Positions 2,969 through 45,065 of a stretch of DNA of 64,000 bases are shown in pieces. Position 1 is the first letter of the stretch, and each line of letters begins with the position of its first letter. The position numbers and the translations under genes are program-made. The DNA comes from Pristiophorus japonicus. Taxonomy: Eukaryota. The stretch lies in NCBI RefSeq assembly GCF_044704955.1, contig NC_091989.1, positions 104,098,001 through 104,162,000 on the forward strand, in the 5' to 3' direction. The notes under the pieces were generated by a model, which saw nothing but the letters and a program-made list of their open reading frames with translations, was not told the origin of the DNA and searched no databases.

Positions 2969-3492
2969 GTAGGTTCATCTCATTTATCCGGGAATAGGGT
3001 TGCAATATAAATAAATATTGTTATGATGGGGATATTTTATCAAAACCTATTTTGCAGACGTATTTGCCCTGCTTTGATGTGTCATTCAAATCGTGTTTTC
3101 ACATTTGTTGCGAAGCAGGTGTAAGTTATTAAAGAAAGAGAAACAATGAAATCGGTAGCGTCATTGAACATATAACTAGATAATAATTATGTGTGCATCC
3201 ATCTAGCCGTTGCTTTTGGAATTTGATATTATATGTCTAAGATGCTGAAACGACCTATTGTTTCAACATATCTGAAACACTATATCGTAGTGAAAATCGA
3301 CAGGTTGAAATGTAAATTGCAATGGACACACTATTTAATGGGCATTTGCACATTTTAAAATATATTAGTTGTGGTTTCTGCATTTTATTTGTGGTCCAGT
3401 TCATTCTGTTTATTGTTTGATCAGCAATCTGTAAATTGGGGAAGACAATGAACAAGCCACATAAAAATACATTTTCTTTGTGGCCCATGCAG

Positions 3493-3630
3493 GGTGCCAA
3501 GGACGAGATCATTGCTTATGCTGCCGTAAATTTGAGCAAAGCCAAGGAAATTCCAAGGCGTAAACATGCAGAGGAGAGGACAACATACGCTCAGGAGAAA
3601 CATAGGAACGCGTGGAGCGCCAACATTAAT
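3493..3630 (+). CDS. IgSF receptor gene A, ITIM exon (GAKDEIIAYAAVNLSKAKEIPRRKHAEERTTYAQ...)
   Basis: Acceptor ttttctttgtggcccatgcag, phase 0; ITIM IAYAAV; the GT donor gtaaga at 3631 keeps frame; the probable ancestral donor after 3594 now reads GA. Confidence 0.78.
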
Positions 3631-3779
3631 GTAAGAGCGCAGTATTTGGGGTTGTTCTGACTTTGACCGTGTGTTGTATCTAAAACTGTGTGTGTTATTC
3701 TGACGGCTGCCTTGAGCAGCAAACCACAACCTGGTAAAACGACCACCAATCAACAATATTTAAAACATTGGCTTTTCAG

Positions 3780-3953
3780 ATAAAACAAGGGACAGCCCAG
3801 GACAAGGTGACCTACGCGATTCTAGAATTGTCTGGCACCGAGAAAGCGGGAAAATCTAAAAATAATAAAAGAATCATAGAATATGCCGAGATACAGACGA
3901 AAACCCCAAGAGGAATAACAGAAGCCGTCTACACTGATGCAAGAATGAAATAG
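3780..3953 (+). CDS. IgSF receptor gene A, terminal exon with ITIMs (VTYAIL, IEYAEI, AVYTDA); SIRP-alpha-like inhibitory tail
   Basis: Acceptor ttggcttttcag, phase 0, open to TAG 3951-3953; Y-to-Y spacing of 23 aa, identical to that in the preceding exon. Confidence 0.85.
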   Translation: MKQGTAQDKVTYAILELSGTEKAGKSKNNKRIIEYAEIQTKTPRGITEAVYTDARMK

Positions 3954-21318: not shown

Positions 21319-24300
21319 GTGGCGACGAGTTACGGGATTACAGAATCCACAGAATGGCAAACAACGGATCAGATGAAAAGTACAATGTGGGAGACAATTG
21401 GGAGGACTTTATACAAAAAGGCTCCAGCAAAGCTTTGTAACCAAAGACTGGTTAGGCGATGATAAGGCAGACAAGAAAAGAGCCCATCTCTTGACCAGCT
21501 GTGGCTCAAAAACATACGCTTTAATGTAGGATCTGTTGGCACCCGAGAAACCATCAAGCAAGTCATTTGAAGAATTGAGCACACTGTTAAGAGACCACCT
21601 GAAGCCAGCGAGCAGCCTACACATGGCCAGACACAGGTTCTATAACTACGCTGTATGGGCCAGAGCATACCCGACTTCGTGGCGGAACTTCAGAGGTTGC
21701 CTAGTTTATGTGAGTTCTCCGATGAACTGAGGAGAGAAATGCTGAGACTTTTTCATTGAAGGAATAGGCCACGCAGGCATATTCCAAAAGTTCATAGAGA
21801 CCAAGAACCTGACCTTAGAGGCAGCAGCACTGGTTGCACAGACATTCTTGATAGGGGAAGAAGAAACAAGGTTGATTTACAATGCAGGTACGACAACTAA
21901 CGAAATATCGGAACAAGAAGTTCACAGCATTAAACAAGCTGCTACCCCCACACACAGACAAAACCAGGAGAACAGGCTCTCAACAGCAGGCAGAAGCCAT
22001 CAAGGACCACAGCAACGGCCGTTCACACCTCATCAACCCATAATGTGAGCAATCAACTGCAAACTGAGAGAAGCTCAAGGGAGATCAGCCAGATGCAGCT
22101 CATTCTTTGGGAACACTTTGAACAATGAAACAGGTCTGTGCTGGAAGTGTGGGGGTGGGCACTCGTCAAGGGGATGTCGATTTCAGCAGGCTGTTTTCAG
22201 AAATTGTGAATATACAGGGCATTTGCCCCGCATGTGCAAAAAAACGGCAGCTCAGCTGGTATATGAATCCGATGGGTTGGAAAGCGGACCAGAAGATGGT
22301 AGGGACAGTACCCGGGACACCGATTACAGCGAGTCAACATGATCAATGGCCGCTGCTCCTACAACAGGATGCCTCTTATAATGATGAGGATCCTACTCAA
22401 CGGGATATCTGTCAAGATGGAGCTGGATACGGGAGCGAGTCAATCTCTCATGGGCGCTCAACAATTTGAACAACTGTGGCTGCATAAAAGAGACAGACCA
22501 AAACTCACAAGGGTCGACACCAAACTAAGAACCTATACCAAAGAAATCGTACCAGTCCTCGTCAGCGCCATGCTCTCTGTCACACACAAAGGGACAGAGA
22601 ACCGACTTCCCTGTGGATTGTCCCCGGAGATCCCCCAGCACTGCTGGGGAGAAGCTGGCTGGCAAAACTAAACTGGAAATTGGATGATGTCCATGCCATG
22701 TCGTTAGAGGAACGGAACTCCTGCTCAACAGTTATAAAGTGATTTGAACATCTCTTTCAGCTAGGTGTGGGTACTTTCAAAGGGGCCAAAGTCAAAATCT
22801 ACATCACACATGATGCTAGACCGGTCCATCACAAGGCCAGAGCTTTACCCCATGTGATGATGGAAAAGATTGAACATGAACTAGACAGGCTTCTGCGGGA
22901 AAGCATTATATCACCTGTGGAATTTAACGACTGGGCAAGTCCCATCGTCCCAGTCATGAAGCCTGATGGATCCGTATGAATCTGTGGGGACTACAAATCT
23001 ACCATAAACAGAGTCTCCCTACAGGACCAGTACCCGCTGCCCAGAGCGGAGGACTTATTTGCCACATTGGCTGGAGATAAACTTTTCTCAAAATTAGACC
23101 TCACATCTGCGTATATGATGCAAGAATTGACCGAGGAATCCAAGCTACTCACCACCATCAACACACATCGAGGCCTTTTCATGTACAATCGATGCCCATT
23201 CGGCATCAGGTCGGCAGCTGCCATATTCCAGTGCAGCATGGAGAGTCTGCTCAAGTCCATCCCGGGAACGGTTGTATTTCAAGACGACCTACTTATCATG
23301 GGCAGGGACACCGACTCCCATCTCCGTAATATGGAGGAAGTACTAAAGTGGTTGGATCGGGTAGGCCTACGAGTCAAGAAATCCAAGTGCCTGTTTCTCG
23401 CACCTGAGGTTGAATTTTTGGGCAGAAGGATTGCCGCTGATGGAATCCGCCCAACAGAGTCCAAAACAGAAGCAATTCGCCTGGCACCGAGGCCCCGGAA
23501 TGTCTCAGAACTGTACACCTTTCTCGGGCTACTCAATTACTTTGGGAACTTTATGCAGAACTTAAGCATGCTGCTGGAGCCTCTCCATGTGCTACTCAGG
23601 AAGGGGTGCGATTGGTTTTGGGGGGACGCCCAGGAACGCGCCTTCAAAAGGCACGCAACCTTCTGTGTTCCAACAGTGTTTTGACTTTCTTTGACCCAGG
23701 TAAAAAGCTAGTTCTCACATGCGATGCGTCAGCATATGGGGTCGGGTGCGATTTGCAACATGTCAATAGTGTGGGCAAATTAGAACCCATAGCTTATGCC
23801 TCCAGGTCACTTTCGCAGGCGGAGCACGGGTACAGAATGGTAGAGAAGGAGGCGCTCGCGTGCGTGTACGGTGTCAAAAAGATGCACCAATACCTTTTCG
23901 GGGCCAAGTTCGCATTAGAAACCAACCACAAGCCGCTCACATCTCCCATATCTGAGAGCAAGGCAATAAACGCCAATGCCTCGGCGCGAATTCAACGGTG
24001 GGCACTCATGCTGGCGCCCTACGACTATACCATAAGGCACAGACCAGGCACAGACAACTGTGCTCAGCAGGCTACCCCTGGCGACAACAGAAGGGTCTGA
24101 CGAACAGGAGTGTGAGATAGTCATGGCAATCAATGCCTTTGAGTCCACAGGTTCTCCGATGATGGCTCACCAAATCAGAGCCTGGACGGCCAGTGACCCC
24201 ACGTTATCCTTAGTAAAAAGATGTGTCCTAACCAGTGACTGGGCAGAGGCTTGTGATGCCTGCCCCGAGGAATTAAAACCCTTTCACAGGCGCATGCATG

Positions 24301-25551
24301 AGCTATCACTACAAGCTGACTGCCTGATGTGGGGCAGCACGAGTAGTCATGCCTCTGCGAGGCAGAGAGGCATTTGTCCGGGAGCTCCACCACGAGCACC
24401 CGGGGATCGTTCTCATGAAGATCATAGCCAGATCCCACATCTGGTGGCCTGGTATTGACGCGGACTTGGAGCTCTGCGTCCGAAGGTGCACCATTTGTGC
24501 CCAACTCAGCAATGCCCCCAGGGAGGCTCCACTGAGCCCCTGGCCCTGGCCTACCAAACCGTGGTCGCGGGTGCATGTAGACTATTCAGGCCCATTCATG
24601 GGCAAAATGTTCCTCGTAGTTGTAGATGCATTTACAAAGTGGATCGAATGCACCATTTTAAACTCAAGCACAACCTCCACCACTGTGGAGAGCCTCGCAA
24701 CCATGTATGCAATGCATGGAATCCCTGACATATTGGTCAGTGACAATGGTCCGTGCTTCACCAGCGCAAAATTCCAAGAAGTTATAATTGACCACGGCAT
24801 GAATTGCGTCAAGACGGCACCATTCAAGCTGGCCTCCAACGGTCAGGCGGAGAGAGCAGTGCAAATCATTAAACAAGGCATGCTTAAAATCCAAGGTCCC
24901 ATGCTGCAGGGTCACCTGTCGCGACTGCTGCTGGCATACAGATCTCGTCCGCACTCACTGACTGGGATCCCCCCTGCGCAACTGTTGATGAAAAGGACTT
25001 TAAAAACAAGGCTCTCATTAATCTTCCCAGACATGCATGAAATCGTTGAGGCAAAGCGCCGTAAGCTGACTGATTACCATGACAGAAATTCGAGGTGGAG
25101 ATGGAATGAGATAGGGGACAAAGTGTTTGTACTAAACTATGGCAGGGGTCCCAAATGGCTTGCAGGGACAGTAACGGAAGGAAAGAGGCTGCTGGTAGTA
25201 CAAATGGACAATGGCAAAACCTGTCGGAGGCATGTAGACCAAGTCAAAAGCAGATTTACCAACAACACTGTGGAACCAGAGGCAGACTACAATGTGGAAC
25301 TCGCAGCACACCTGGTGGACAGGCAGAAGGAATAACCTGAGGAAAGGGCAATCCCAACAGACAGACCAGGCGAGTCAACAACAATCACACCAATTGAAAC
25401 AGACAGCCCAGGCGAGATACCAGCAACCACACCCAAAGAAAAACAGGCACCAAGGCAAACAACTGCACCACAACTCAGACGCTCCACGCGAGAGCGTAGA
25501 CCACTTGAGAGACTGAAGCTATAAAGACAATAAGACCTTGGGGGAGGGTGA

Positions 25552-27317: not shown

Positions 27318-29188
27318 ATAAGAACATAAGAAATAGGAACAGGAGTAGGCCATATGACCTCTCGAACCTACTCCGCCATTCAATAAGATCACGGCTGAAC
27401 TGATCATGGACACAGTTCCACTTCCCTGCTCACTCCCCACAATCCCTTATCCCCTTATCGTTCAAGAAAATGCCTATTTCAGTCTTAAATTTAATCCATG
27501 TTCCAGCTTCCACAGCTCTCTGATGCAGTGAATTCCACAGATTTACAATGCTCTGAGAGAAGAAATTTCTCCTCATGTCTGTTTTAAATGGGCAGCCTCT
27601 TATTCTAAGATCATGCCCTCTAGTTCAATCTTCTCCATCAGTGGAAACATCCTCTCTGCATACAACTTGTCAAGCCCCCTCATAATCTTCTACATTTCGA
27701 TACGATTACCTCTCATTCTTCTGAATTCCAATGAGTAGAGGCCCAACCTACTTAACGTTTCCTCATAATTCAACCCCCTCATCTCCCCAATCAACCTAGT
27801 GAACCTTCTCTGATCTGCCTCCAAAGCAAGTACATCCTTTCGTAAATATGGAAACCAAAACTGCACGCAGTATCCCAGGTATGGCCTCACCAATACCTTA
27901 TATGGCTGAAGCAAGACTTCCCTGCTTTTGTACTCCATCCCCTTTGCAGTAAAGGCCAAGATGCCATTGGCCTTCCTCATCGCCTGCTGTACGTGCATAC
28001 TGTCCTTTTGTGTTTTATGCACAAGTACCCCCAGGTCCCGCTGTACTGCTGCACTTTGCAATCTTTCACAATTTAAATAATAACTTGCTCTTTGATTTTT
28101 TTTTCTGCCAAAATTCATGACCACACACTTCCCAACATTATACTCCATCTGCCAAAGTTTTGCCCACTCACTTAGCATATCTATGTCCTTTTGCAGTTTG
28201 TTTGTGTCCTCCTCACACATTACTTTTCCACCCATCTTTGTATCATCAGCAAACTTGGCTACGTTACACTCAGTCCCTTCTTCCAAGTCGTTAATATAGA
28301 TTGTAAATAGTTGGGGTCCCAGCAGGGAGCCCTGCGGCACCCCACTAGTTACTGGTTGCCAACCAGACAATGAACCATTTATCTCAACTTTCTGTTCTCT
28401 GTTAGTTAGCCAATCCTCTATCCATGCTAATTTATTACCCCCGATCCCATGAACTTTTATCTTGTGCAGTAACATTTCATGTGGCACCTTGTCAAATGCC
28501 TTCTGGAAGTCCAAATACACCACATCCTTTGGTTCCCCTTTATCTACTCTGTTCGTTACTTCCTCAAAGAACTCCAGCAAATTTGTCAAAAATGACTTCC
28601 CCTTCATAAATCAATGCTGATTCTGCCTGACTAAATTTTGCTTTTCTAAATGTCCTGCTACTGCTTCTTTAATAATGGTCTCCAACATTTTCCCAACCAC
28701 AGATGTTAGGCTAACTGGTTTATAGTTTCCTGCTTTTTGTCTGCCTCCTTTTTTAAATAGGGGCATTACATTTGCAGTTTTCCAATCTGCTGGGACCTCC
28801 CCAGATTCCAGGGAATTTTGGTAAATTACAACAAATGCATCCACAATCCCTGCCGCTACTTCTCTTAAGACCCTAGGATGCAAGCCATCAGATCCAGGGG
28901 ATTTATTTGCCTTTAGTTCCATTATCTTACTGAGTATCACCTCCTTAGTAATTGTGATTGTGTTAAGTACCTCCCGCCTCCCCCCCCCCCCCACCACCAC
29001 CCCCCCGCCCCCTCATAGCCCCTAGACTATCTACTGTTGGAATATTGTTAGTGTCCTTGACCGTAAAGACTAATACAAAATATTTGTTCAGAGTTTCTGA
29101 CATCTCCATGTTCCCCATTACTAATTCCCTGGTCTCATCCTCTAAGGGACCAACATTTACTTTAGCCATCCTTTTCCTTTTTATATAC
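27318..29188 (-). mobile_element. 5'-truncated CR1 inserted antisense into the RT of the 19036 CR1
   Basis: 305-aa RT ORF 27690-28607 with FADD; tail (acataaga)n at 27318; host reads gaacaaacggac|cttggagtg across it. Confidence 0.92.
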
Positions 29189-32575: not shown

Positions 32576-33539
32576 AGAAACAATGCAAGAATAGGGCTTC
32601 CTATAATTGTACAGATACGAATGTTATGAAACAACAGCTGATTATTCCGTGTACATATTATTACCTCAGTACGCTAAGTTTTTATGCAATCATTTCTCGA
32701 AAGGAAGTTGATGGCAAGGTTTTTCGTAGCTGAAAAATGTCACTATAATTAACAGTGTTCAGAAGCTCTTGGCTCAATTTCGTGCTAAACCATCATTTTG
32801 CCCTCAACAGCTTTGGACTATCTGTAAACTCCAAGAATTGAAGGAGCCCCCATAGCGAGAGAGATTCTGCTATCACCGACACTCCTGGACAGAACAACAG
32901 AAAAGTATTTGCATCCAACAGTTGTTCTCCTCATCTTCACCCTGTCTGCTGCTCTCACTATTGGTTCCCTATGCTATCATATTACTGTCAGCGCTGTTTC
33001 AAATGTTTACCGTTTTTCCTCCTAAACTGCAAATATGTCTTCCAGCAGGCTCTTCTTCATTTCTACTCCCTCAAACAGTTGAATTCAAGACGTATTCCTT
33101 GAAGACCTCCAAACCTTGCTCACTCTTTGCTTCCTCCGATTATCGACATGATTTCAAAACCTCTGCTTACTATTATGAATCACAGCCTCCTGATTTGCAT
33201 TGTGCTTGATCTTAGGCCTTTCAATCTCAAAGGGGACCATATCCATACAACTTGGTTTTTGAATTTAGAATAAATTTAAATGCAGGGAGTGCGTGGCATT
33301 GTGTTTGGAACATTACAGTTCTTTCACCATTGCAGACGCCCGTCACATTAAATTGCTTTGGCCAGCTCAATTGACTTGATCAATTATGTTCTCAAGTTCA
33401 ACTTATTATGAAACTTAAATATATTTTTCAACAGACACAAAATGGTCTGAGGTTGCCTTGAAATAACATTGGGTGTTGTGATGAGGCTTTAATCTACATG
33501 AAGCTCACACCTCCATTTCATTCTTTGAATTCGGCCGTT

Positions 33540-33674
33540 GAGACCACAGTCACATGCGTGTAGTCTCTCACGTCATTATCTCACAATTCACATCAGGTTA
33601 TGCACAGAATTATTTCCCCAAAGTATTAGAGTTCCGTGTTTGTTGTTTTCAAACGGCCAGTATCAATCACTGAA
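33540..33674 (+). promoter_or_regulatory. Candidate proximal promoter of gene B
   Basis: RUNX-type GACCACA 33542-33548, CRE-like TCACGTCA 33568-33575 and GATA-type TTATCT 33576-33581 just upstream of the ATG; motif matches only. Confidence 0.35.
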
Positions 33675-33729
33675 ATGGCTATGAGAGCTGTACTTCGGAG
33701 TATACAGTTCATGGGGCTTACTTTCATAG
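33675..33729 (+). CDS. Gene B exon 1, leader peptide (MAMRAVLRSIQFMGLTFI)
   Basis: ATG in gaaATGg context, phase-1 donor gtattt, 102-nt intron ending tttcttaatag. Confidence 0.8.
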
Positions 33730-33831
33730 GTATTTTCTTTAGTTCGTTCTTTGTCTTTATGCCTCTCTCTCTCTCTGAATCTCGCTCCATTTTTTTTTTA
33801 TAACTCTAACAAATGTTCATTTTCTTAATAG

Positions 33832-34143
33832 TTGCTGCGGATACTCTGTTTGAAGTAGCCCAAGCCCCTGAAAATACCAATTCGATCGCTGGTGCAAACG
33901 TTGCCTTCAATTGCACGTTTCCTATTTTGCAACACGATTCAGATGTGGATGTTCATTGGTGGAAACTTGGCGAAAATGAATTTATACAACCAGACACCAG
34001 GAAACGATTTCTTATTGAGAAAGGAAGAGTCTATTTCGAACTCCGGAATATCAGTGTCCAGGACTCTGGAGTTTATCATTGCGGAGTGATACGTCGGGGA
34101 AACATGTTCGTAAATGGAAGCGGATCAAAGCTTGTTGTTAGAG
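33832..34143 (+). CDS. Gene B exon 2, V-set Ig domain with germline-joined J-like segment
   Basis: VAQAP..G.NVAFNC..VHWWK..RF..LRNISVQDSGVYHC..NGSGSKLVV; phase 1/1; donor gtaaga. Confidence 0.93.
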
Positions 34144-34654
34144 GTAAGAACATTGTAAAGAGCGAATAGGCGGTATTGTCTTACAGTTATTAAATATAAA
34201 TATTAACGTATAGCATTCCTCACTCTCTCACTGTAGCTTTAAACTTACATTAGAAATCAAACGGTTCAATTATAATTCTAGTTACAAAGTTGTAATTATA
34301 AATATAACACGTGTAGAGCGGTTTGCTGTTTTTAAGCCACCTTAATGTTTCATTAATCTTTAGTTCTATAATTTCATGCATGTAAGCTTGCGCAGGAAGC
34401 GTTGTCATGCCATTCAGGTGCGAATGCAAATTGTGATAACTTCAAAGGTTTTCAGTATAAATTACATTTTCATTGGCCTTATTTCAATATATCCGAAACA
34501 GTTTAAAACTGCAGTTTGATGACCATCTAAACTATCAGTCTAAACGTGCTGTTTTCGAGTATAAAGTCTAATTTCAATTATACATGTATGCAAAAGTTAA
34601 TCTACATGATCATTTTTGAATGTTGTGTCCCTGCTCTTGCTGCGATAAATAAGA

Positions 34655-35075
34655 AAGAGTTTGTACTTATATGCCGCATTTGGTGTCCCAAAGCGTTTTA
34701 CAACCAATTAAGTGCTTTTGAAATCTAGTTACTGTATTAGTGTAGGCAAACGTGGCAGCGAATGTACAAGCAGCAATGTCCGACAATGGGACATTTCATG
34801 GTGGTGACTGAGGGATAAATATTGGCCAGGACATCGAGACCATATCTATGCACTGCTTCGAGTAGTGCCATGGGAGGGTTTACGTTCACCTGAGAGGGCA
34901 GAAGGGGCCGAGGTTTAACATTTCATCGAACATCGCTCCGACAGTGCAACATTCCCTCCGTACTGCACTGAAGGGCCAGTCTTGATGATTTGTGTTGAAG
35001 TCTCTGGAATAGGCTTAGAAGTCACGAAGTTCTTACTCGGAGGCAGGGGTGCTACTGCTAAGCCACGACTGACAA
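34655..35075 (-). mobile_element. Deu-domain SINE (SacSINE1-like) in gene B intron 2
   Basis: Reverse complement of the element at 42400-42780; matches the recalled Deu core and cgctttgggac...tatataa tail. Confidence 0.7.
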
Positions 35076-35719
35076 TGTATTCTCTAGGACTGAGAGATCA
35101 GAGTCTCGGAAGCCTGGTTCTATTTCCTGTTCTTCAGAAAGTAGCTTCTCTCGGCCTCTGGTCGACGAACCAAATAATTTCCATCTCCTCAAATCCCTTC
35201 AAAAACGAATATATTATCGATAAAGAATTTTGTGAATGTGTCCCTGAATTGTGCAAACTCCATTCGCCGCAGTTGTTAATTTCTAGATATGAATGTTCCA
35301 TGACGCCAAAGTAACCCGTGAAGTGAAAGGTTCGTTTTTGGTTAATATCCCCGATTGTGATGTTATACGTTTATTATGCAAGTAATACGAATAAAGAAAA
35401 ACCTCGTGGCTGGAAATAGAATTCCTTTTGTGGTCGCGGTTAACTGTGAGAGAAAGTTCGCATCTAAGATGCTATTTATGTCTTGCCGTTGTTTATTTCT
35501 CGGGTTACCTCAGTAACAAGACGGGCGATGATGTGGGGTTGCGCTTCCTCTGCGCACCGTAGGTAGTGACAATGTGTGAGCGCATTCTGAAGGTTTTGTC
35601 GGGTTGGGAATAGTGGGCATAGAAGGTCTTCACAAATGCATCTTCAATTCGCTACACAGACCAGGAGAATGCTTCATCCACGCTTTCAAATTGTTCTCAA
35701 TAACGAGGTAACGCTGGAA

Positions 35720-36020
35720 AGTGAGGTTTCTATGTTTTATAGAGGGAGATGTATAAATTGTGAACATAATGGGCAAAAGAGGGGAAAATTACACAGCAAG
35801 TTGCTATGATCTGAAATGCACTGCCTGAAAGGGTGGCCGAAACCGATTCTATAGCAACCTTCAACAAGGAAATTGGTTAACTACTTGAAGGGGAACATTT
35901 GCGGGGCTCTGGGGAAAGAGCAGGGGTGTGGAACTAATTAGATTGTTCTTCCAATGAGCCAGCATAGGTACGATGGGCCGAGTGGCCTATTTTTGTGCTG
36001 TATATTCTATGATTCTATAA
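35720..36020 (+). mobile_element. CR1 3' UTR fragment in gene B intron 2
   Basis: gatgggccgagtggcct...attctatgattctat tail. Confidence 0.7.
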
Positions 36021-36203
36021 TCTATAGTAATTAAAACGTAATGTTTTCAATTCACCATAAACACACAGATGTATAGCTTTCTCATACTGTTGTATCCGAT
36101 CTGAAGACATATTATGCCATTTGGAGTGTTCCACAAAAGGAGATTAAGTCATAAATTCCAGAATAGATCAGAAATGTAACTTTCTTTTTCGACCTGTCAC
36201 CAG

Positions 36204-36521
36204 CTCCCCCAACTCCCCTGAGGATTGTTCGAAAAGAATCGGAAAGTAATGTACCTGTATTCGATTCTTTGACTCTCGTGTGTGAAATGTCTTCATTTTA
36301 CCCGGATGAACTGGCTATCACTTGGTACAAAAATAATGGAAGTATTGAGACCGGAATACATACTACTAAGCAGCTCAGCAGAGCCGGGATGTATGAAGCT
36401 TCCAGTTTTTTTGCAGAGGCACAGCCTGTCCAAGGAGGAACTGTTTATGTCTGTCTGGTTGCTCACGTGACCCTCCAGTTTCCAGCCATGGTAATTTACT
36501 TGGTTCCAAATTCTAATTCAG
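36204..36521 (+). CDS. Gene B exon 3, C1-set Ig domain
   Basis: LTLVC...FYPDELAITWYKN...G.YEASS...YVCLVAHVTL; acceptor tcaccag, donor gtaaga, phase 1/1. Confidence 0.93.
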
Positions 36522-37910
36522 GTAAGATGTCACTTTGCTTACAAAAATAAACGTCTGCCAGTAATCTGAGTGAATTATTATGAGACGTGTAAAGATTTTC
36601 TCTTTTGCTGTTTAAAGTGTAAGAAATGTAGCTACAAATTGCGAACAGTGTAAATGATCAACCACATGATATTTTTGTAATATCCCATCAATATTAAAAG
36701 GATTACTATTTACTGTTTATTTCCAGAGCACATAGATTTTCAGTTTCTGATATATCACCTCCTCCGGAATGGTTACAGGCGGAACTTTCAACTTCGGTGG
36801 GGTGGGATGCAAAACTGGCGGTATAGGATCGGGCGCGTTATGCACACGCCAGATTTTCCTTTCGATTTGTTTTTATATACCTACCAAAGCTGAACGTTCG
36901 CCCAGTGCATCCCGTCAGTTCAGTAAATATTGCAACCTGGAAAACAGTTATGTACAAAATTATTTTTTTTCACATCAGGCCAAGTTTATTCATCAATTTG
37001 CACTCTTCGTTCAAACTGCCTCCACTATCACCTCATCTCAAATCAAATAACCGCTGATTTAGTGCAAAATGATCGAAACGCTTAGTAGATTACGTTGATC
37101 TAGAACACGTATGTGGCTTGAGTGTTGCAATTCTTTAATGTGAAGTGTCAAATGATGTAGTATTGTGCTGATCGCTCTATGGCAAATATATGTGTGACCA
37201 TTTCCTGTGATCGCTATTGCTAGTGAAATGGGAATCATGCAAACCAGTTATCTTAGGTACCGAGTACTAGCTGCATATTTTTTCTTTTCTTCAAATAGTG
37301 GCAGTTACATCGTTTGGAATGCATGGAGCGTTGATGAAACAAAGCAGCGGTGTGATAAATTTTACAAACATAATTCTACAGAAAAAAGCAACAAGCTTAG
37401 ACATACCTAGCAGAGGAAATGCTCCCAAAAGAAGTTATGACAAAATCCCACATAGTGACGAGGGCAAATGCTAAATTAATTAATTAACTATTTAAAACTA
37501 AAAATTAATTTTTATCTTATCAATAGAAAATGCTCTTATCCCGCAGAGTGAAAAACAGATACAGAAACTCAAGATCGGCCAGCCTTCCAGGAACATAGAA
37601 TAAACAGGGATGAAATTGGTCTTTAGCGGTAGCTAAAAATGGCCAATATCCATTCAGTCTTCTTTACACTCCTGGCGATTTTCTATTACATTAGCCCGTT
37701 TTCCGCCGGGCGATAAGGATAATGTCTCCCACCCTTTGCGTTTAGTTTTCAATAGCGATAAATCAATTTCCATCAGTTAACAATTTGATTACCCATGCTC
37801 AACTGACGTAAACATTTGTTCAAGTATCAGATTCCGTTTAGGGCTCTAACTGTTGACGGCATCCTCAACAATGCACAGCCCTATATGTAAAAGTTATATT
37901 AATTTTGCAG

Positions 37911-38030
37911 GCAGTGACTGTACCTCACCCTCACCTTATTTACGGATCATTGGATGTGCAGGCTTTGCGATGACGTTTCTGGTGCTACTGATTATTGTTG
38001 GAATGTCGTTCACATGCAGTAACAGTAAAG
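37911..38030 (+). CDS. Gene B exon 4, stalk + transmembrane (GSDCTSPSPYLRIIGCAGFAMTFLVLLIIVGMSFTCSNSK)
   Basis: Acceptor aattttgcag, donor gtaagt, phase 1/1; hydrophobic helix with an N-terminal Arg. Confidence 0.88.
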
Positions 38031-38556: not shown

Positions 38557-38603
38557 GCAGACACAGAAAAAATGAAGCAAACAATGGTGACGAGTCTAAG
38601 TAA
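38557..38603 (+). CDS. Gene B exon 5, short cytoplasmic tail GRHRKNEANNGDESK* (total predicted product 283 aa)
   Basis: Acceptor ttttgtgttttgccag; 44 coding nt like gene A exon 2925-2968, then TAA where a GT donor is expected. Confidence 0.65.
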
Positions 38604-40039: not shown

Positions 40040-40420
40040 AAATAAGATTAGGTTCATAGGGCCTTATGTCACTAAGATGGGAGATGAGGATCGACTGAAG
40101 AAACTGTTTTTTTTTAACTAAGACAAAGAATTGAAAAGAAGATCTGATAGAGATGTTCACATTTTGAAGGATATTAAGTAAATAACTAGAGGAAATCTAT
40201 TTCCACTGACCCATGAGTCGGCAACTAGAGGTCGTAAATTTAAGATCATCACCTAAAGAACAAAAAGGTGGTATAATGTTTCTTAGCCAGGTGGTTGTTG
40301 GGTGGTGGAATTTCCTACCAGACTGTTGGTGAAATCAGAATCCATAGAAGCTTTTGCAAGAGGAGGAGATAACTATTTCCAAAAAAAAATGATTAAACGG
40401 TAGGGGGAAACGACTAAGTG
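40040..40420 (+). mobile_element. Old CR1 3' fragment
   Basis: DLIEMF...TRGRKFK remnants. Confidence 0.55.
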
Positions 40421-40787
40421 GTTACCCCGTTATAAGAGCACGAATATGTAAAATGACATGATACTAACAATATCAAACAGGTGGCCAGTGAAACTGTGGA
40501 CGCAATGGGCATTAAATATTGCATACTGTGGACAATGTCTTGATAATTATTAAACTATATTAACAACAGTTATGGAGTTGGATAATCTACAGCGTTACCT
40601 GAAAAGCACCTATATGGGAATGGATGTTATAGAAATGTAATTACCTGAGGTAAGTAGCTGACCCAATAACAAAAATATACCAAGCTAAGGAATATTCAAA
40701 TATCATCAAGACTTTAATCTGATTTACGAAGCATTCTCTAGATTAATTAAGTTGATGAGATAATTCTACAAGGCATTACTTTTATAG

Positions 40788-40962
40788 ACCTTGCAAGAAG
40801 CAGTTGATAACCCGCTGACTTACGCAACTGCCGACTAAGAAAAATGGAGAACCGAGAAGGAAGGAAAAGAGCACAGAGTACGCAGAAATAGGGAACGTAC
40901 ACCAAAAGAGATACGCCTTATTCGTCTACACGGAACCAAGATTCAAATTATACCAATTGTAG
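40788..40962 (+). pseudogene. Frameshifted relic of the gene B terminal ITIM/ITSM exon
   Basis: TLQEAVDNPLTYATAD* followed, in another frame, by KSTEYAEI..VYTEPRFK; aligns to gene A exon 3780-3953 with an 11-nt deficit. Confidence 0.82.
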
Positions 40963-42399
40963 ACGATGAAGCCTTTTACTTCTTTTCATGTGACATGCAA
41001 TGTCCTCTGTTGTCATCAACCTCAGTCATTCTTATGACTCAGAGTAACTCCAACCCAACATTATATCTAAAGTTTCAACAGAATAGTATTTATAATAAGG
41101 GAAAATTATTTGATCATTTGAATGAGAGTTCATTGGATTAACTAGATATTGTAGTCGGTTAATACATCATAATTTCATGACTGTCAATCTAACCGTCAGG
41201 ACGGTTTTACCACTGCTTAAAAGTAACCAGAAGAAACCAGCAACCTCGTTTTTTCAGAGATTCTGTTCAAAGTCAATGCCTATTTCTTTCCAGGGATAAT
41301 TTATTTCGAGATTTCTGTAAAAAAAAATCAAATACTCTGCAGTCTGCCACAAATACAGAGTAAAGACGGAAGATAAATATATTTGGGTCTCCTCAAAGTG
41401 AAAGATTTATATACATAAAAAACTTCAGGCATTAGTTATAACCATGTAACATAGCTGGATGTAGCACACAACTCGTTTTACTCTAACCATGTGCGAACAG
41501 TATGTCTTCTCCCAAAGGCCACATGTGCATTTCCAAGTGCATAGAATTATATAAGCCCGGAATTTGCAGTCGGAGGCGTACGTCCGGAGAACACCTACGA
41601 CTGGCTAAAATTATCCTCACTTACCTTCAGGGTCTCAAGCTGCTGAGACGTCTGGTCCTGGGCCTGCAGGGTTACGCCTGCGTAAAGACCCACGGATCCC
41701 AGGGAGGCGGGTCGTTCCGAAGCGTACCTGGAAGCACGTGGGCCAGGTCGTTCATTCAGAAAGGAGGATTCCTAATATGCTTATTGCGATTCCATTTATG
41801 TACGGAATCCCCATAAGCATATTAGGAATAACCGAACAATTAAATAATTTAGACAAATGCAATAAGAATAAATGCTATCATGTTCAAAATTAATGGAAAG
41901 TCCCTTCAATAAAGCAAATACAAAATAAATGTAATTTAAAAAATATATGTTAAACATTTTAATCCAGGCCAAAATTTGCGTAAACTAATGTTATGTGTTT
42001 GTGCGTCATTTTTTTATTTTAAAATGTTTAATTTAAGATTTATATTAACCCTTATGCTGGTGAAAGCAGACCTACACCTACTTTTACAAGGCGTAAAGGT
42101 TTCACGGCCATTTGCTGGACAGTAGTTGGATAAATAGCCCAACTCTGCTTTAACGAAAGTGATTTTCCAGTTGGTGCAGTAGATCGGTCAAGGCAAACAT
42201 AAACAGATCGCAAGTTCCGTTTTTCATGCATGTGCAAAGCATGCAGAAACCTGGATCATGCAGGGCCTTTCTGAAGGCTTACAAAGCCGTCAGCAGAACT
42301 ACAAAATCTTGGTCATAGAGTCTGCAGCACAGAAACAGATCATTCGGCCTAACTGGTCTATGCCAGCGTTTATGCTTCACATGAGCCTCCTCCCACCCG

Positions 42400-42926: not shown

Positions 42927-45065
42927 ATCATGATACTGAAGGGGTTGACTGTGGATGGGCAATGGCAGACATTTAGAGACCGCATGGATGAACTACAACA
43001 ATTGTACATTCCTGTCTGTCGTAAAAATAAAAAAGGGAAGGTGGCTCAACCGTGGCTATCAAGGGAAATCAGGGATAGCATTAAAGCCAAGGAAGTGGCA
43101 TACAAATTGGCCAGAAATAGCAGAGAACCCGGGGACTGGGAGAAATTTAGAACTCAGCAGAGGAGGACAAAGGGTTTGATTAGGGCAGGGAAAATGGAGT
43201 ACGAGAAGAAGCTTGCAGGGAACATTAAGACGGATTGCAAAAGTTTCTATAGATATGTAAAGAGAAAAAGGTTAGTAAAGACAAACGTAGGTCCCCTGCA
43301 GTCATAACGGGGAACAAAGAAATGGCGGACCAATTGAACAAGTACTTTGGTTCGGTATTCACTGAGGAGGACACAAACAACCTTCCGGATATAAAAGGGG
43401 TCGGAGGGTCTAGTAAGGAGGAGGAACTGAGGGAAATCCTTATTAGTCGGGAAATTGTGTTGGGAAAATTGATGGGATTGAAGGCCGATAAATCCCCAGG
43501 GCCTGATGGACTGCATCCCAGAGTACTTAAGGAGGTGGCCTTGGAAATAGTGGATGCATTGACAGTCATTTTCCAACATTCCATTGACTCTGGATCAGTT
43601 CCTATGGAGTGGAGGGTAGCCAATGTAACCCCACTTTTTAAAAAAGGAGGGAGAGAGAAAACAGGGAATTACAGACCGGTCAGCCTGACATCGGTAGTGG
43701 GTAAAATGATGGAATCAATTATTAAGGATGTCATCGCAGTGCATTTGGAAAGAGGTAATATGATAGGTCCAAGTCAGCATGGATTTGTGAAAGGGAAATC
43801 ATGCTTGACAAATCTTCTGGAATTTTTTGAGGATGTTTCCAGTAGAGTGGACAATGGAGAACCAGTTGATGTGGTATATTTGGACTTTCAGAAGGCTTTC
43901 GACAAGGTCCCACACAAGAGATTAATGTGCAAAGTTAAAGCACATGTGATTGGGGGTAGTGTGCTGACGTGGATTGAGAACTGGTTGTCAGACAGGAAGC
44001 AAAGAGTAGGAGTAAATGGGGACTTTTCAGAATGGCAGGCAGTGACTAGTGGGGTACCGCAAGGTTCTGTGCTGGGGCCCCAGCTGTTTACACTGTACAT
44101 TAATGATTTAGATGAGGGGATTAAATGTAGTATCTCCAAATTTGCGGATGACACTAAGTTGGGTGGCAGTGTGAGCTGCGAGGAGGATTCTATGAGGCTG
44201 CAGAGCGACTTGGATAGGTTAGGTGAGTGGGCAAATGCATGGCAGATGAAGTATAATGTGGATAAATGTGAGGTTATCCACTTTGGTGGTAAAAACAGAG
44301 AGACAGACTATTATCTGAATGGTGACAGATTAGGAAAAGAGACCTGGGTGTCATGGTACATCAGTCATTGAAGGTTGGCATGCAGTTACAGCAGGCGGTT
44401 AAGAAAGCAAATGGCATGTTGGCCTTCATAGCGAGGGGATTTGAGTACAAGGGCAGGGAGGTGTTGCTACAATTGTACAAGGTCTTGGTGAGGCCACACC
44501 TGGAGTATTGTGTACAGTTTTGGTCTCCTAACCTGAGGAAGGACATTCTTGCTATTGAGGGAGTGCAGCGAAGGTTCACCAGACTGATTCCCGAGATGGC
44601 GGGACTGACCTATCAAGAAAGACTGGATCAACTGGGCTTGTATTCACTGGAGTTCAGAAGAATGAGACGGGACCTCATAGAAACGTTTAAAATTCTGACG
44701 GGGTTAGACAGGTTAGATGCAGGAAGAATGTTCCCAATGTTGGGGAAGTCCAGAACCAGGGGACACAGTCTAAGGATAAGGGGGAAGCCATTTAGGACCG
44801 AGATGAGGAGGAATTTCTTCACCCAGAGAGTGGTGAACCTGTGGAATTCTCTACCACAGAAAGTTGTTGAGGCCAATTCACTAAATATATTCAAAAAGGA
44901 GTTAGATGAAGTCCTTACTACTAGGGGAATCAAGGGGTATGGTGAGAAAGCAGGAATGGGGTACTGAAGTTGCATGTTCAGCCATGAACTCATTGAATGG
45001 CGGTGCAGGCTAGAAGGGCCGAATGGCCTACTCCTGCACCTATTTTCTATGTTTCTATGTTTCTA
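42927..45065 (+). mobile_element. Relatively young 5'-truncated CR1
   Basis: 349-aa and 204-aa RT ORFs with PQGSVLGP and FADD; (tttctatg)n tail. Confidence 0.95.

What the first reader, a model, noticed from the sequence alone, without database searches (positions are those of the whole stretch)
33675..38030. Non-rearranging receptor shaped like a TCR chain: leader - VJ - C1 - Cys stalk - TM
Seen in sequence: one exon encodes both the V core (DSGVYHC) and a J-like G strand (NGSGSKLVV, compare G.G.T.L.V), with no RSS. It is followed by a true C1-set domain (FYP, W, Y.C.V.H) and a membrane-proximal Cys (GSDCT). Established knowledge: C1 domains are confined to Ig, TCR, MHC, B2M, tapasin, SIRP and a few relatives, and germline VJ(-C1) genes are discussed as relatives of the pre-RAG antigen-receptor precursor. 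Mammalian SIRP-alpha/beta have V-C1-C1; this gene has only V-C1. Inference: it belongs to a poorly characterised chondrichthyan VJ-C1 receptor family, possibly disulfide-dimerised.
Basis: partly seen in the sequence, partly recalled or inferred. Interest (0 to 1): 0.82.

Follow-up and report, generated by a model that had tools for sequence, protein, structure and literature searches.

The report
Shark SIRP-like V-C1 receptor gene
This is a real, intact shark gene for a non-rearranging surface immune receptor (one antibody-like variable domain, one C1 constant domain, a membrane anchor), but it is an ordinary member of a large receptor family that databases already predict, under contradictory names, in sharks, rays and chimaeras.

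Summary
Five GT-AG exons, with phase 1 at each of the four junctions, encode leader, V(J), C1, stalk+TM and a short tail (283 aa). Pfam, sequence hallmarks and confident predicted folds confirm a short V-set domain with a J-type G-x-G bulge and a true C1-set domain. There is no RSS.

The gene is not unique. An exhaustive protein search found at least 71 proteins with the same V-C1 layout, and every one I could name is chondrichthyan. Their automatic names disagree: SIRPα/SHPS-1-like, SIRPβ-like, tapasin-related, NCR3LG1-like, Igλ-like, MHC II β-like. Separate V and C1 trees place the window gene in one conserved shark+ray orthogroup (60-79% identity to shark members).

The stalk Cys is not conserved, so dimerisation is unsupported. 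Three orthologue models carry an ITIM/ITSM tail. In the window that terminal exon survives only as a frame-broken relic (40788-40914), leaving a short tail and an orthogroup-specific Arg at the outer TM edge. An ITIM-tailed paralogue's tail lies 30 kb upstream.

The V-C1 unit scores the same against SIRPα (62 bits) and Ig light chains (60-62), and lower against UrIg2 (42).

The scan has already reported this family repeatedly on other DNA of this genome. I found no paper describing it.

The parts
33675..33729 (+). Exon 1: start codon and most of a split signal peptide (18 codons + 1 nt), followed by a 102-bp leader intron
   Evidence: ATG at 33675, donor tag|GTATTT. The leader matches the N-terminus of orthologue P0155.
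33832..34143 (+). Exon 2: end of the leader plus a short V-set domain with a germline-joined J-type G strand (NGSGSKLVV); phase 1 in and out
   Evidence: translation. Pfam V-set 9.4e-8, 32.7 bits. Model pLDDT 89.9 with the G strand broken at G-S-G. Foldseek top matches are VNAR, TCR V-alpha, SIRP-alpha d1 and NKp30. No RSS heptamer.
36204..36521 (+). Exon 3: C1-set domain
   Evidence: Pfam C1-set 1.1e-10, 42.2 bits. FYP, 13 residues from Cys to Trp, and C-L-V-A-H, the hallmarks listed in PMC2785349. Model pLDDT 87.5. Foldseek top hits are MHC class II C1 domains, TM 0.75-0.82.
37911..38030 (+). Exon 4: stalk (G-S-D-C-T...), Arg at the outer membrane edge (Y-L-R-I-I-G-C), transmembrane helix, start of the tail
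   Evidence: The best 19-aa Kyte-Doolittle window (2.61) starts right after the Arg. Aligns with orthologue TMs.
38557..38603 (+). Exon 5: short basic/acidic tail (RHRKNEANNGDESK) ending in TAA at 38601-38603. A GT at 38600 could instead act as a phase-2 donor.
   Evidence: Matches the C-terminus of the Heterodontus orthologue P0155.
40788..40914 (+). Relic of the ancestral terminal exon (ITIM + ITSM-like motifs), now frame-broken. The piece ending in LTYA is followed by T-A-D and a stop in one frame. The KKNGEPRRKEKSTEYAEIGNVHQKR piece is in the +1 frame, and the orthologues' stop after KR is lost.
   Evidence: tblastn with orthologue tails: P0158 71% over 28 aa, E 3e-7; P0174 E 5e-4; P0156 77% over 13 aa. 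Frame analysis.
41867..41929 (+). Cluster of AATAAA signals, the nearest canonical polyadenylation signals downstream of the gene
   Evidence: No AATAAA lies between the exon-5 stop and the relic exon, only ATTAAA at 40392-40549.

Best explanation
The locus is an intact, non-rearranging gene for a type I membrane receptor of the chondrichthyan 'SIRP-like' V-C1 family: split leader, one short V domain with a germline J-type strand, one C1-set domain, a stalk, a TM and a short tail. It belongs to a conserved shark+ray orthogroup marked by a basic residue (Arg in sharks, Lys in rays) at the outer edge of the TM helix. The lineage's ITIM/ITSM-bearing terminal exon has decayed in this genome, so the protein made here has a 15-24 residue tail without tyrosine motifs. 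Shown: gene structure, domain types, family and orthogroup membership, tail decay, and an ITIM-tailed paralogue's tail 30 kb upstream. Inferred: the monomeric V domain binds a cell-surface or pathogen ligand through its loops, as SIRP does. Having lost its inhibitory tail, the receptor acts as the activating or non-signalling partner of inhibitory paralogues. If activating, it would signal by pairing its membrane-edge Arg with an acidic ITAM adaptor of the FcR-gamma/DAP12 type. I put activating at about 0.4, a signalling-dead decoy or adhesion form at about 0.35, and the rest on the rival explanations.
For: Gene model and splice phases. Domains: Pfam, C1 hallmarks, predicted folds and Foldseek. 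Family: 234 hits below 1e-10 with the C1 exon alone, and 71 fetched proteins with the same V-then-C1 layout, all named ones chondrichthyan. Orthogroup: the same 11-member clade with SH-aLRT 95 in independent C1 and V trees, with 60-65% V and 74-79% C1 identity to Heterodontus, Cetorhinus and Mustelus. Arg/Lys is specific to the orthogroup, and paralogues have L/A there. Tail relic. Neighbouring ITIM-type tail at 3490-3950. All invariant family residues are retained.
Against: There is no expression evidence: no RNA run was listed, so the 3' end (stop in exon 5 versus splicing to the relic exon) is unknown. The Arg lies just outside the hydrophobic core, not inside it. Orthologue models that still carry ITIM/ITSM tails (P0158, P0174) have the same Arg, so it need not mean adaptor coupling. 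No adaptor or ligand was examined. The tail decay rests on a single assembly.
Confidence: 0.8

Rival explanations
1. The gene is still an inhibitory receptor. The ITIM/ITSM tail is made through splicing I could not model, or the frame breaks are assembly errors.
For: Orthologue models P0156, P0158 and P0174 have such tails. The relic exon keeps an intact T-E-Y-A-E-I motif, and the canonical AATAAA signals lie beyond it.
Against: No GT in exon 5 gives the phase needed for the LTYA frame. Skipping exon 5 also hits a stop. The two motifs are in different frames, the first motif reads L-T-Y-A-T-A (wrong +3 residue), and the ancestral stop is lost. That makes at least three independent lesions.
Confidence: 0.07
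2. The whole gene is a young pseudogene, and tail loss is the first step of decay in a repeat-rich region.
For: The terminal exon has decayed. The window is otherwise almost all retroelement debris. No RNA run was listed. Earlier notes report dead copies of this family elsewhere in the genome.
Against: 283 codons are open across five exons with eight canonical splice sites. Every invariant family residue and all C1 hallmarks are kept. Short-tailed orthologue models exist in Heterodontus, S. canicula and three rays.
Confidence: 0.1
3. It is a relic close to the pre-RAG antigen-receptor precursor (UrIg-like, or TCR-chain-like) that forms disulfide-linked dimers.
For: Single-exon VJ, split leader with a 102-bp intron, V directly followed by C1, and a stalk Cys. 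Fig. 2 of PMC12227049 postulates a two-domain VJ-C1 ancestor. The family profile scores as well against Ig light chains as against SIRP-alpha.
Against: The stalk Cys is Ser in all orthologues. An N-G-S/T sequon sits at the J bulge in 39 of 50 family V domains. The score against UrIg2 V-C1 is only 41.9 bits. A UrIg2-type protein (P0003) falls in the outgroup of the C1 tree. The family has ITIM-type tails and a paired-receptor organisation, like innate receptors.
Confidence: 0.03

Closest known systems
Mammalian SIRP family (SIRP-alpha/beta/gamma; SHPS-1/PTPNS1)
   Same: Non-rearranging type I receptor with an N-terminal V domain that has a J-type G strand, followed directly by C1-set domains. 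The V+C1 unit aligns contiguously with SIRP-alpha d1-d2 (62.3 bits), including the shared ...V-x-H-V-T-L-Q end of the F-G region. The family contains ITIM-tailed and short-tailed members arranged in clusters, the 'paired receptor' criteria quoted in PMC3716694. RefSeq often names members SIRP-alpha/SHPS-1-like or SIRP-beta-like.
   Different: One C1 domain instead of two. The V domain is shorter (56 residues between the cysteines) and resembles VNAR in shape. Sequence similarity is no higher than to Ig light chains. Synteny with the tetrapod SIRP cluster and CD47 binding are untested. This particular gene has neither an ITIM tail nor a mid-membrane Lys.
Chondrichthyan V-C1 'SIRP-like' predicted proteins (e.g. 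XP_067906082.1, XP_062923439.1, XP_007902825.2)
   Same: Same exon-encoded layout, the same invariant residues, and 38-79% identity per domain. The window gene nests inside one orthogroup of this family.
   Different: Nothing essential. This copy has a private stalk Cys, Gly instead of Arg at the inner TM end, and a decayed terminal exon.
UrIg / UrIg2 (elasmobranch non-rearranging VJ-C1n genes, PMC12227049; PDB 9dmx)
   Same: Single-exon VJ, split leader, C1-type constant domains, elasmobranch, non-rearranging.
   Different: UrIg/UrIg2 have three to eleven C domains and form disulfide-linked homodimers. The family profile scores only 41.9 bits against UrIg2 V-C1. A UrIg2-type protein sits in the outgroup of the C1 tree.
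Ig light chains / TCR chains
   Same: V(J)-C1 order and comparable profile scores (60-62 bits). The C1 hallmarks are shared.
   Different: No RSS and no separate J segment. The gene has a TM with its own tail lineage, and there is a glycan sequon at the position of the J-motif Phe/Trp.
Tapasin/TAPBPR, B7-H6 (NCR3LG1), MHC class II beta (names given by automatic annotation)
   Same: They contain a C1-set or C-like Ig domain next to the membrane. Foldseek's best C1 matches are MHC II membrane-proximal domains.
   Different: The gene has no tapasin N-terminal domain, no peptide-binding domain and no B7-type V. None of tapasin, TAPBPR or B7-H6 is among the 60 best PDB matches of the family profile.

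Membership tests
IgSF C1-set domain (exon 3) | (F/Y)(F/Y/H)P at the start of the BC loop; exactly 13 residues between the B-strand Cys and the C-strand Trp; xVxH after the F-strand Cys (PMC2785349) | tested here: met
   FYP; 13 residues (EMSSFYPDELAIT); C-L-V-A-H. Pfam PF07654 42.2 bits against a cut-off of 21.
IgSF C1-set domain (exon 3) | C1-type fold | tested here: met
   Model pLDDT 87.5. The best Foldseek matches listed are MHC class II chains aligned over a C1 domain, TM 0.70-0.82.
VJ-type V domain (exon 2) | V-set domain with DxGxYxC and a G strand carrying a G-x-G bulge, encoded in one exon without an RSS | tested here: met
   DSGVYHC and N-G-S-G-S-K-L-V-V. The G strand is split at 95-97 in the model. 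No heptamer. Caveat: the V is short, and the I-set score is close behind (28.6 vs 32.7 bits).
Chondrichthyan SIRP-like V-C1 family | Leader, V(J), single C1 and TM layout, and placement inside the family in domain trees | tested here: met
   71 proteins share the layout. The window V and C1 each fall in the same 11-member clade, SH-aLRT 95.
Chondrichthyan SIRP-like V-C1 family | Cytoplasmic ITIM/ITSM-type modules (long-tailed members) or a short tail (short-tailed members) | tested here: met
   This gene has a short tail, with a frame-broken relic of the long tail at 40788-40914.
SIRP family (tetrapod) | Three extracellular Ig domains, V-C1-C1 | tested here: not met
   Only one C1 exon. tblastn with the window's own exon translations finds no further Ig exon in the window. 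Family-protein tblastn hits outside the two domain exons were tail/TM matches only.
SIRP family (tetrapod) | Closer in sequence to SIRP than to other V-C1 proteins | tested here: inconclusive
   The family profile scores 62.3 bits against SIRP-alpha d1-d2, 61.8 against lambda and 60.2 against kappa light chains.
SIRP family (tetrapod) | Paired-receptor organisation: clustered genes with similar ectodomains and both inhibitory (ITIM) and activating/short-tailed members | tested here: met
   An ITIM-type tail of a neighbouring paralogue lies at 3490-3950 on the same strand. Family members of one species share one chromosome-sized contig. Criteria are from PMC3716694.
SIRP family (tetrapod) | Shared synteny with the tetrapod SIRP cluster, and binding of CD47 | not testable with these tools
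Activating receptors coupled to FcR-gamma/DAP12 | Basic residue within the TM helix that pairs with the adaptor's Asp, plus a short tail | tested here: inconclusive
   An Arg is present and conserved as R/K in the orthogroup, but it sits immediately before the hydrophobic core. It also co-occurs with ITIM tails in P0158 and P0174.
Rearranging antigen receptors (IgL, TCR) | Separate V and J segments flanked by RSS | tested here: not met
   V and J-type strand are in one exon, and there is no heptamer.
UrIg / UrIg2 | VJ followed by three or more C1-type domains, and closest sequence relation to UrIg | tested here: not met
   One C1 only. 41.9 bits against 9dmx V-C1. UrIg2-type P0003 is in the outgroup.
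Tapasin / TAPBPR | Large tapasin-type N-terminal domain preceding the C1 domain | tested here: not met
   The N-terminal domain is a 103-residue V-set domain. No tapasin or TAPBPR chain is among the best 60 PDB matches.

The most novel reading that the evidence does not exclude
The chondrichthyan V-C1 family, scoring about the same against Ig light chains and SIRP-alpha, could be the surviving form of the two-domain VJ-C1 gene postulated as ancestor of UrIg and the antigen receptors, and of SIRPs. Within it, this orthogroup (a basic TM-edge residue kept for roughly the shark-ray divergence time, with an ITIM/ITSM tail kept in some species and decayed in others) would capture repeated inhibitory-to-activating conversion in progress.
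Probability: 0.07. Interest if true: 0.7.

Novelty: new member of a known kind. Interest (0 to 1): 0.3.

Why it matters
On its own the gene adds one more copy to a family that genome annotation pipelines already predict in every cartilaginous fish checked, and that this scan has met repeatedly in the same genome. The family as a whole is worth a specialist's attention. It is a large, apparently chondrichthyan-restricted set of non-rearranging V(J)-C1 receptors with inhibitory and short-tailed members. It carries a dozen contradictory automatic names and appears in no paper I could find. It also sits at equal sequence distance from SIRP and Ig light chains, which bears on the old question of how SIRPs relate to antigen-receptor precursors. 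This locus gives a clean example of an orthologue that lost its inhibitory tail while keeping a basic membrane-edge residue.

Tried and rejected
(1) The word-index search with the V exon alone gave nothing. The length filter makes this blank uninformative.

(2) RNA evidence: no run was listed.

(4) A search for further Ig exons in the window by tblastn, with the window's own exon translations, found none.

(5) I tried every GT in exon 5, and exon-5 skipping, to join the relic tail exon in frame. None works.

(6) The automatic names tapasin-related, NCR3LG1, Ig lambda and MHC II beta were rejected on architecture and on the PDB profile ranking.

(7) UrIg/UrIg2 membership was rejected.

(8) Disulfide dimerisation through the stalk Cys was rejected as a lineage feature. 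However, four galeomorph shark orthologue models have a different unpaired Cys five residues upstream.

(10) The joined five-exon protein was never sent to any tool.
Full report
**Observation.**

- The ATG at 33675 opens an 18-codon leader exon that ends at 33729.
- After a 102-bp intron, exon 2 (33832-34143) finishes the leader and encodes a 103-residue domain. That domain holds D-S-G-V-Y-H-C and, 10 residues later in the same exon, N-G-S-G-S-K-L-V-V.
- Exon 3 (36204-36521) encodes a 105-residue domain with FYP, one Trp and Y-V-C-L-V-A-H.
- Exon 4 (37911-38030) encodes G-S-D-C-T, then Y-L-R followed by a 19-residue hydrophobic core (Kyte-Doolittle mean 2.61).
- All four introns between exons 1-5 are GT-AG, and all four junctions are phase 1.
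- No RSS heptamer lies in or beside the V exon.

**Domain types.**

- Pfam gives V-set (32.7 bits, cut-off 26) for exon 2 and C1-set (42.2 bits, cut-off 21; next best family 25.9) for exon 3.
- Hatherley et al. 2009 (PMC2785349) list three sequence hallmarks of C1-set domains. Exon 3 has all three: FYP, exactly 13 residues between the B-strand Cys and the Trp, and xVxH after the F-strand Cys.
- Each exon-encoded domain was folded with an alignment of relatives. The C1 domain gave mean pLDDT 87.5, and its best Foldseek matches are the C1 domains of MHC class II chains, TM 0.75-0.82.
- The V domain gave pLDDT 89.9, with its G strand interrupted at G-S-G as in J-encoded strands.
- The V domain is short (56 residues between the cysteines). 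It most resembles shark VNAR, then TCR V-alpha, SIRP-alpha d1, Ig-beta and NKp30.

So the "VJ" and "true C1" parts of the observation hold.

**Relatives.**

- The C1 exon alone, scored against 1.84 billion representative proteins, gave 234 hits below 1e-10.
- Every one of these for which a source name could be read is from a shark, ray or chimaera. The genera are Heterodontus, Cetorhinus, Mustelus, Scyliorhinus, Chiloscyllium, Stegostoma, Heptranchias, Pristis, Mobula, Hypanus, Hemitrygon, Narcine, Amblyraja and Callorhinchus.
- The names are all automatic and contradict each other: SIRP-alpha/SHPS-1-like, SIRP-beta-1-like, tapasin-related, NCR3LG1-like, Ig lambda-like, CD276, MHC class II beta-like, or uncharacterised.
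- The non-chondrichthyan hits are multi-C1 proteins of amphibians and coelacanth, IgNAR and Ig constant regions.
- Full-text searches found no paper that describes SIRP-like genes of cartilaginous fish.

**Orthogroup.**

- Exon-by-exon BLASTP shows clear orthologue-level matches:

| Protein | Species | V identity | C1 identity | TM identity |
|---|---|---|---|---|
| P0155 | Heterodontus | 65% | 77% | 58% |
| P0157 | Cetorhinus | 60% | 79% | not aligned |
| P0156 | Mustelus | 60% | 74% | partial |
| P0153, P0023, P0151 | rays | 46-54% | 53-55% | 40-60% (partial) |
| paralogues | various | 54% or less | 50% or less | not compared |

- Separate maximum-likelihood trees of the C1 segments (outgroup IgNAR, a UrIg2-type protein and others) and of the V segments were built.
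- Both place the window gene in the same 11-member clade (SH-aLRT 95). The three ray members form a strongly supported subclade in both trees (SH-aLRT 99). This marks a gene lineage at least as old as the elasmobranchs.
- The window protein itself was not in the databases searched.

**What the orthologues change in the reading.**

- The stalk Cys is Ser in every orthologue. Four galeomorph shark models have a different unpaired Cys five residues upstream, while Heterodontus, Chiloscyllium and the rays have none. Disulfide dimerisation is therefore not a conserved property.
- The Arg in Y-L-R-I is conserved as Arg in sharks and Lys in rays (Gln in Mustelus), and is replaced by Leu/Ala in paralogues. 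It is a marker of this orthogroup.
- The family's J-type motif is N-G-[ST]-G-[ST] in 39 of 50 V domains. That is an N-glycosylation sequon at the place where Ig/TCR J segments have the Phe/Trp that packs in the V-V interface. From this I infer a monomeric, SIRP- or VNAR-like V domain rather than a paired one.

**Tail.**

- The Heterodontus model ends like the window's exon 5. The Mustelus, Chiloscyllium and S. torazame models continue into a tail with an ITIM (LTYAEV-type) and an ITSM-like motif (TEYAEI-type).
- tblastn with those tails finds their counterpart in the window at 40788-40914, 2.2 kb past exon 5 on the same strand.
- That exon is broken, in four ways:
  - The only usable donor in exon 5 (38599|38600) is phase 2. 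With the acceptor at 40787|40788 it reads K-PCKKQLITR-stop.
  - The frame that encodes the LTYA piece requires phase 0, reads L-T-Y-A-T-A (wrong +3 residue), and stops three codons after the motif.
  - The TEYAEI piece is in the +1 frame, behind an out-of-frame deletion relative to the orthologues.
  - The orthologues' stop after KR is gone.
- Whether the message stops in exon 5 (283 aa) or splices to the relic (292 aa), no tyrosine motif is made.
- The nearest AATAAA signals are at 41867-41929, which hints that the old terminal exon may still serve as the 3' end.

**Neighbourhood.**

- The rest of the window is retroelement debris. The exception is 3331-3953 (+), where a TM-like segment and two tail exons with IAYAAV, TTYAQE, VTYAIL, IEYAEI and AVYTDA motifs match the tails of long-tailed family members (E down to 4e-9).
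- This is the 3' end of an inhibitory paralogue whose V and C1 exons lie upstream of the window.
- The two genes are head-to-tail, as in paired-receptor clusters. Members of the family from one species also share one chromosome-sized contig.

**Nearest characterised families.**

- A profile of 18 family members was scored against all PDB sequences. The per-unit scores for V+C1 were:

| Target | Bits |
|---|---|
| SIRP-alpha d1-d2 (2wng), one contiguous alignment ending in the shared V-x-H-V-T-L-Q | 62.3 |
| Lambda light chain | 61.8 |
| Kappa light chain | 60.2 |
| UrIg2 V-C1 (9dmx) | 41.9 |

- No tapasin, TAPBPR or B7-H6 chain is in the best 60.
- P0003 ("titin-like", white shark) is a UrIg2-type protein (292.6 bits against 9dmx) and falls in the outgroup of the C1 tree.
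- In architecture and signalling logic the family works like SIRPs, meeting the paired-receptor criteria quoted in PMC3716694. As a matter of membership, though, the three-domain criterion is not met. Sequence does not favour SIRP over IgL, and synteny and CD47 binding could not be tested.

**Mechanism.**

- Shown: a type I receptor with a glycosylated short V domain, one C1 domain, a short stalk, a TM preceded by Arg, and a 15-24 residue tail without tyrosines, next to an ITIM-tailed paralogue.
- Inferred: ligand binding occurs through the V loops. Loss of the inhibitory tail turned this copy into either an activating partner or a non-signalling decoy/adhesion form like SIRP-gamma.
- The activating route would work through Arg pairing with an FcR-gamma/DAP12-type adaptor. 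From memory, FcR-gamma-coupled receptors carry their Arg near the outer end of the TM, but this was not tested here.
- The Arg lies just outside the hydrophobic core and co-occurs with ITIM tails in two orthologue models. The adaptor step therefore remains uncertain.

**Limits.**

- True tetrapod SIRP, tapasin and B7-H6 sequences could not be brought into the trees.
- The joined spliced protein was not submitted anywhere. All work was done exon by exon by reference.

**Earlier notes of this scan.**

- They report the same family many times in this genome, which they call a sawshark. I did not test the species.
- Several copies lie on the same piece as this window. One locus 5.8 Mb away shows the same pattern of an Arg-TM gene with a fossil tail next to an ITIM-tailed neighbour.
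- My results were obtained independently and agree with these notes.

**Verdict.**

However, this is an ordinary new member of a family that is already predicted, though unnamed and unstudied. The dimer idea and the special link to the antigen-receptor precursor are not supported.

Noticed in passing
window 3331-3953 (+): This is the 3' end of a neighbouring paralogue: a TM-like segment (about 3358-3420) and two tail exons with five tyrosine motifs (IAYAAV, TTYAQE, VTYAIL, IEYAEI, AVYTDA). They match the tails of long-tailed family members (P0028 E 4e-9, P0056 E 1e-8). Its V and C1 exons are not in the window.
   Followed up: partly
window 33498-33674 (+): The roughly 180 bp upstream of the start codon align, when translated, with the N-terminal extension of the sawfish model P0153. 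That model probably translates a 5'UTR, and the match suggests a 5' flank conserved between a shark and a ray.
   Followed up: no
P0154 (S. torazame), P0001, P0016 (Amblyraja): Some database models of the family look like fusions of tandem neighbours: P0154 is V-V-C1 and P0001 is C1-V-C1. The skate protein P0016 has two almost identical C1 domains, so a SIRP-like V-C1-C1 layout arose inside the family by a recent exon duplication.
   Followed up: partly
window 1-32700 and 42800-64000: There is dense retroelement debris on both strands. It includes LINE-type reverse-transcriptase ORFs (e.g. 27690-28607 -, 43322-44371 +) and an LTR-element pol with integrase (23067-25335 +).
   Followed up: no
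orthologue models P0157, P0156, P0173, P0154/P0174: Four galeomorph shark orthologue lineages carry an unpaired Cys in V-P-N/T-C at the end of the C1 exon. The window gene has Ser there and instead has a Cys five residues later. So a membrane-proximal Cys has arisen at two different positions in this orthogroup.
   Followed up: partly
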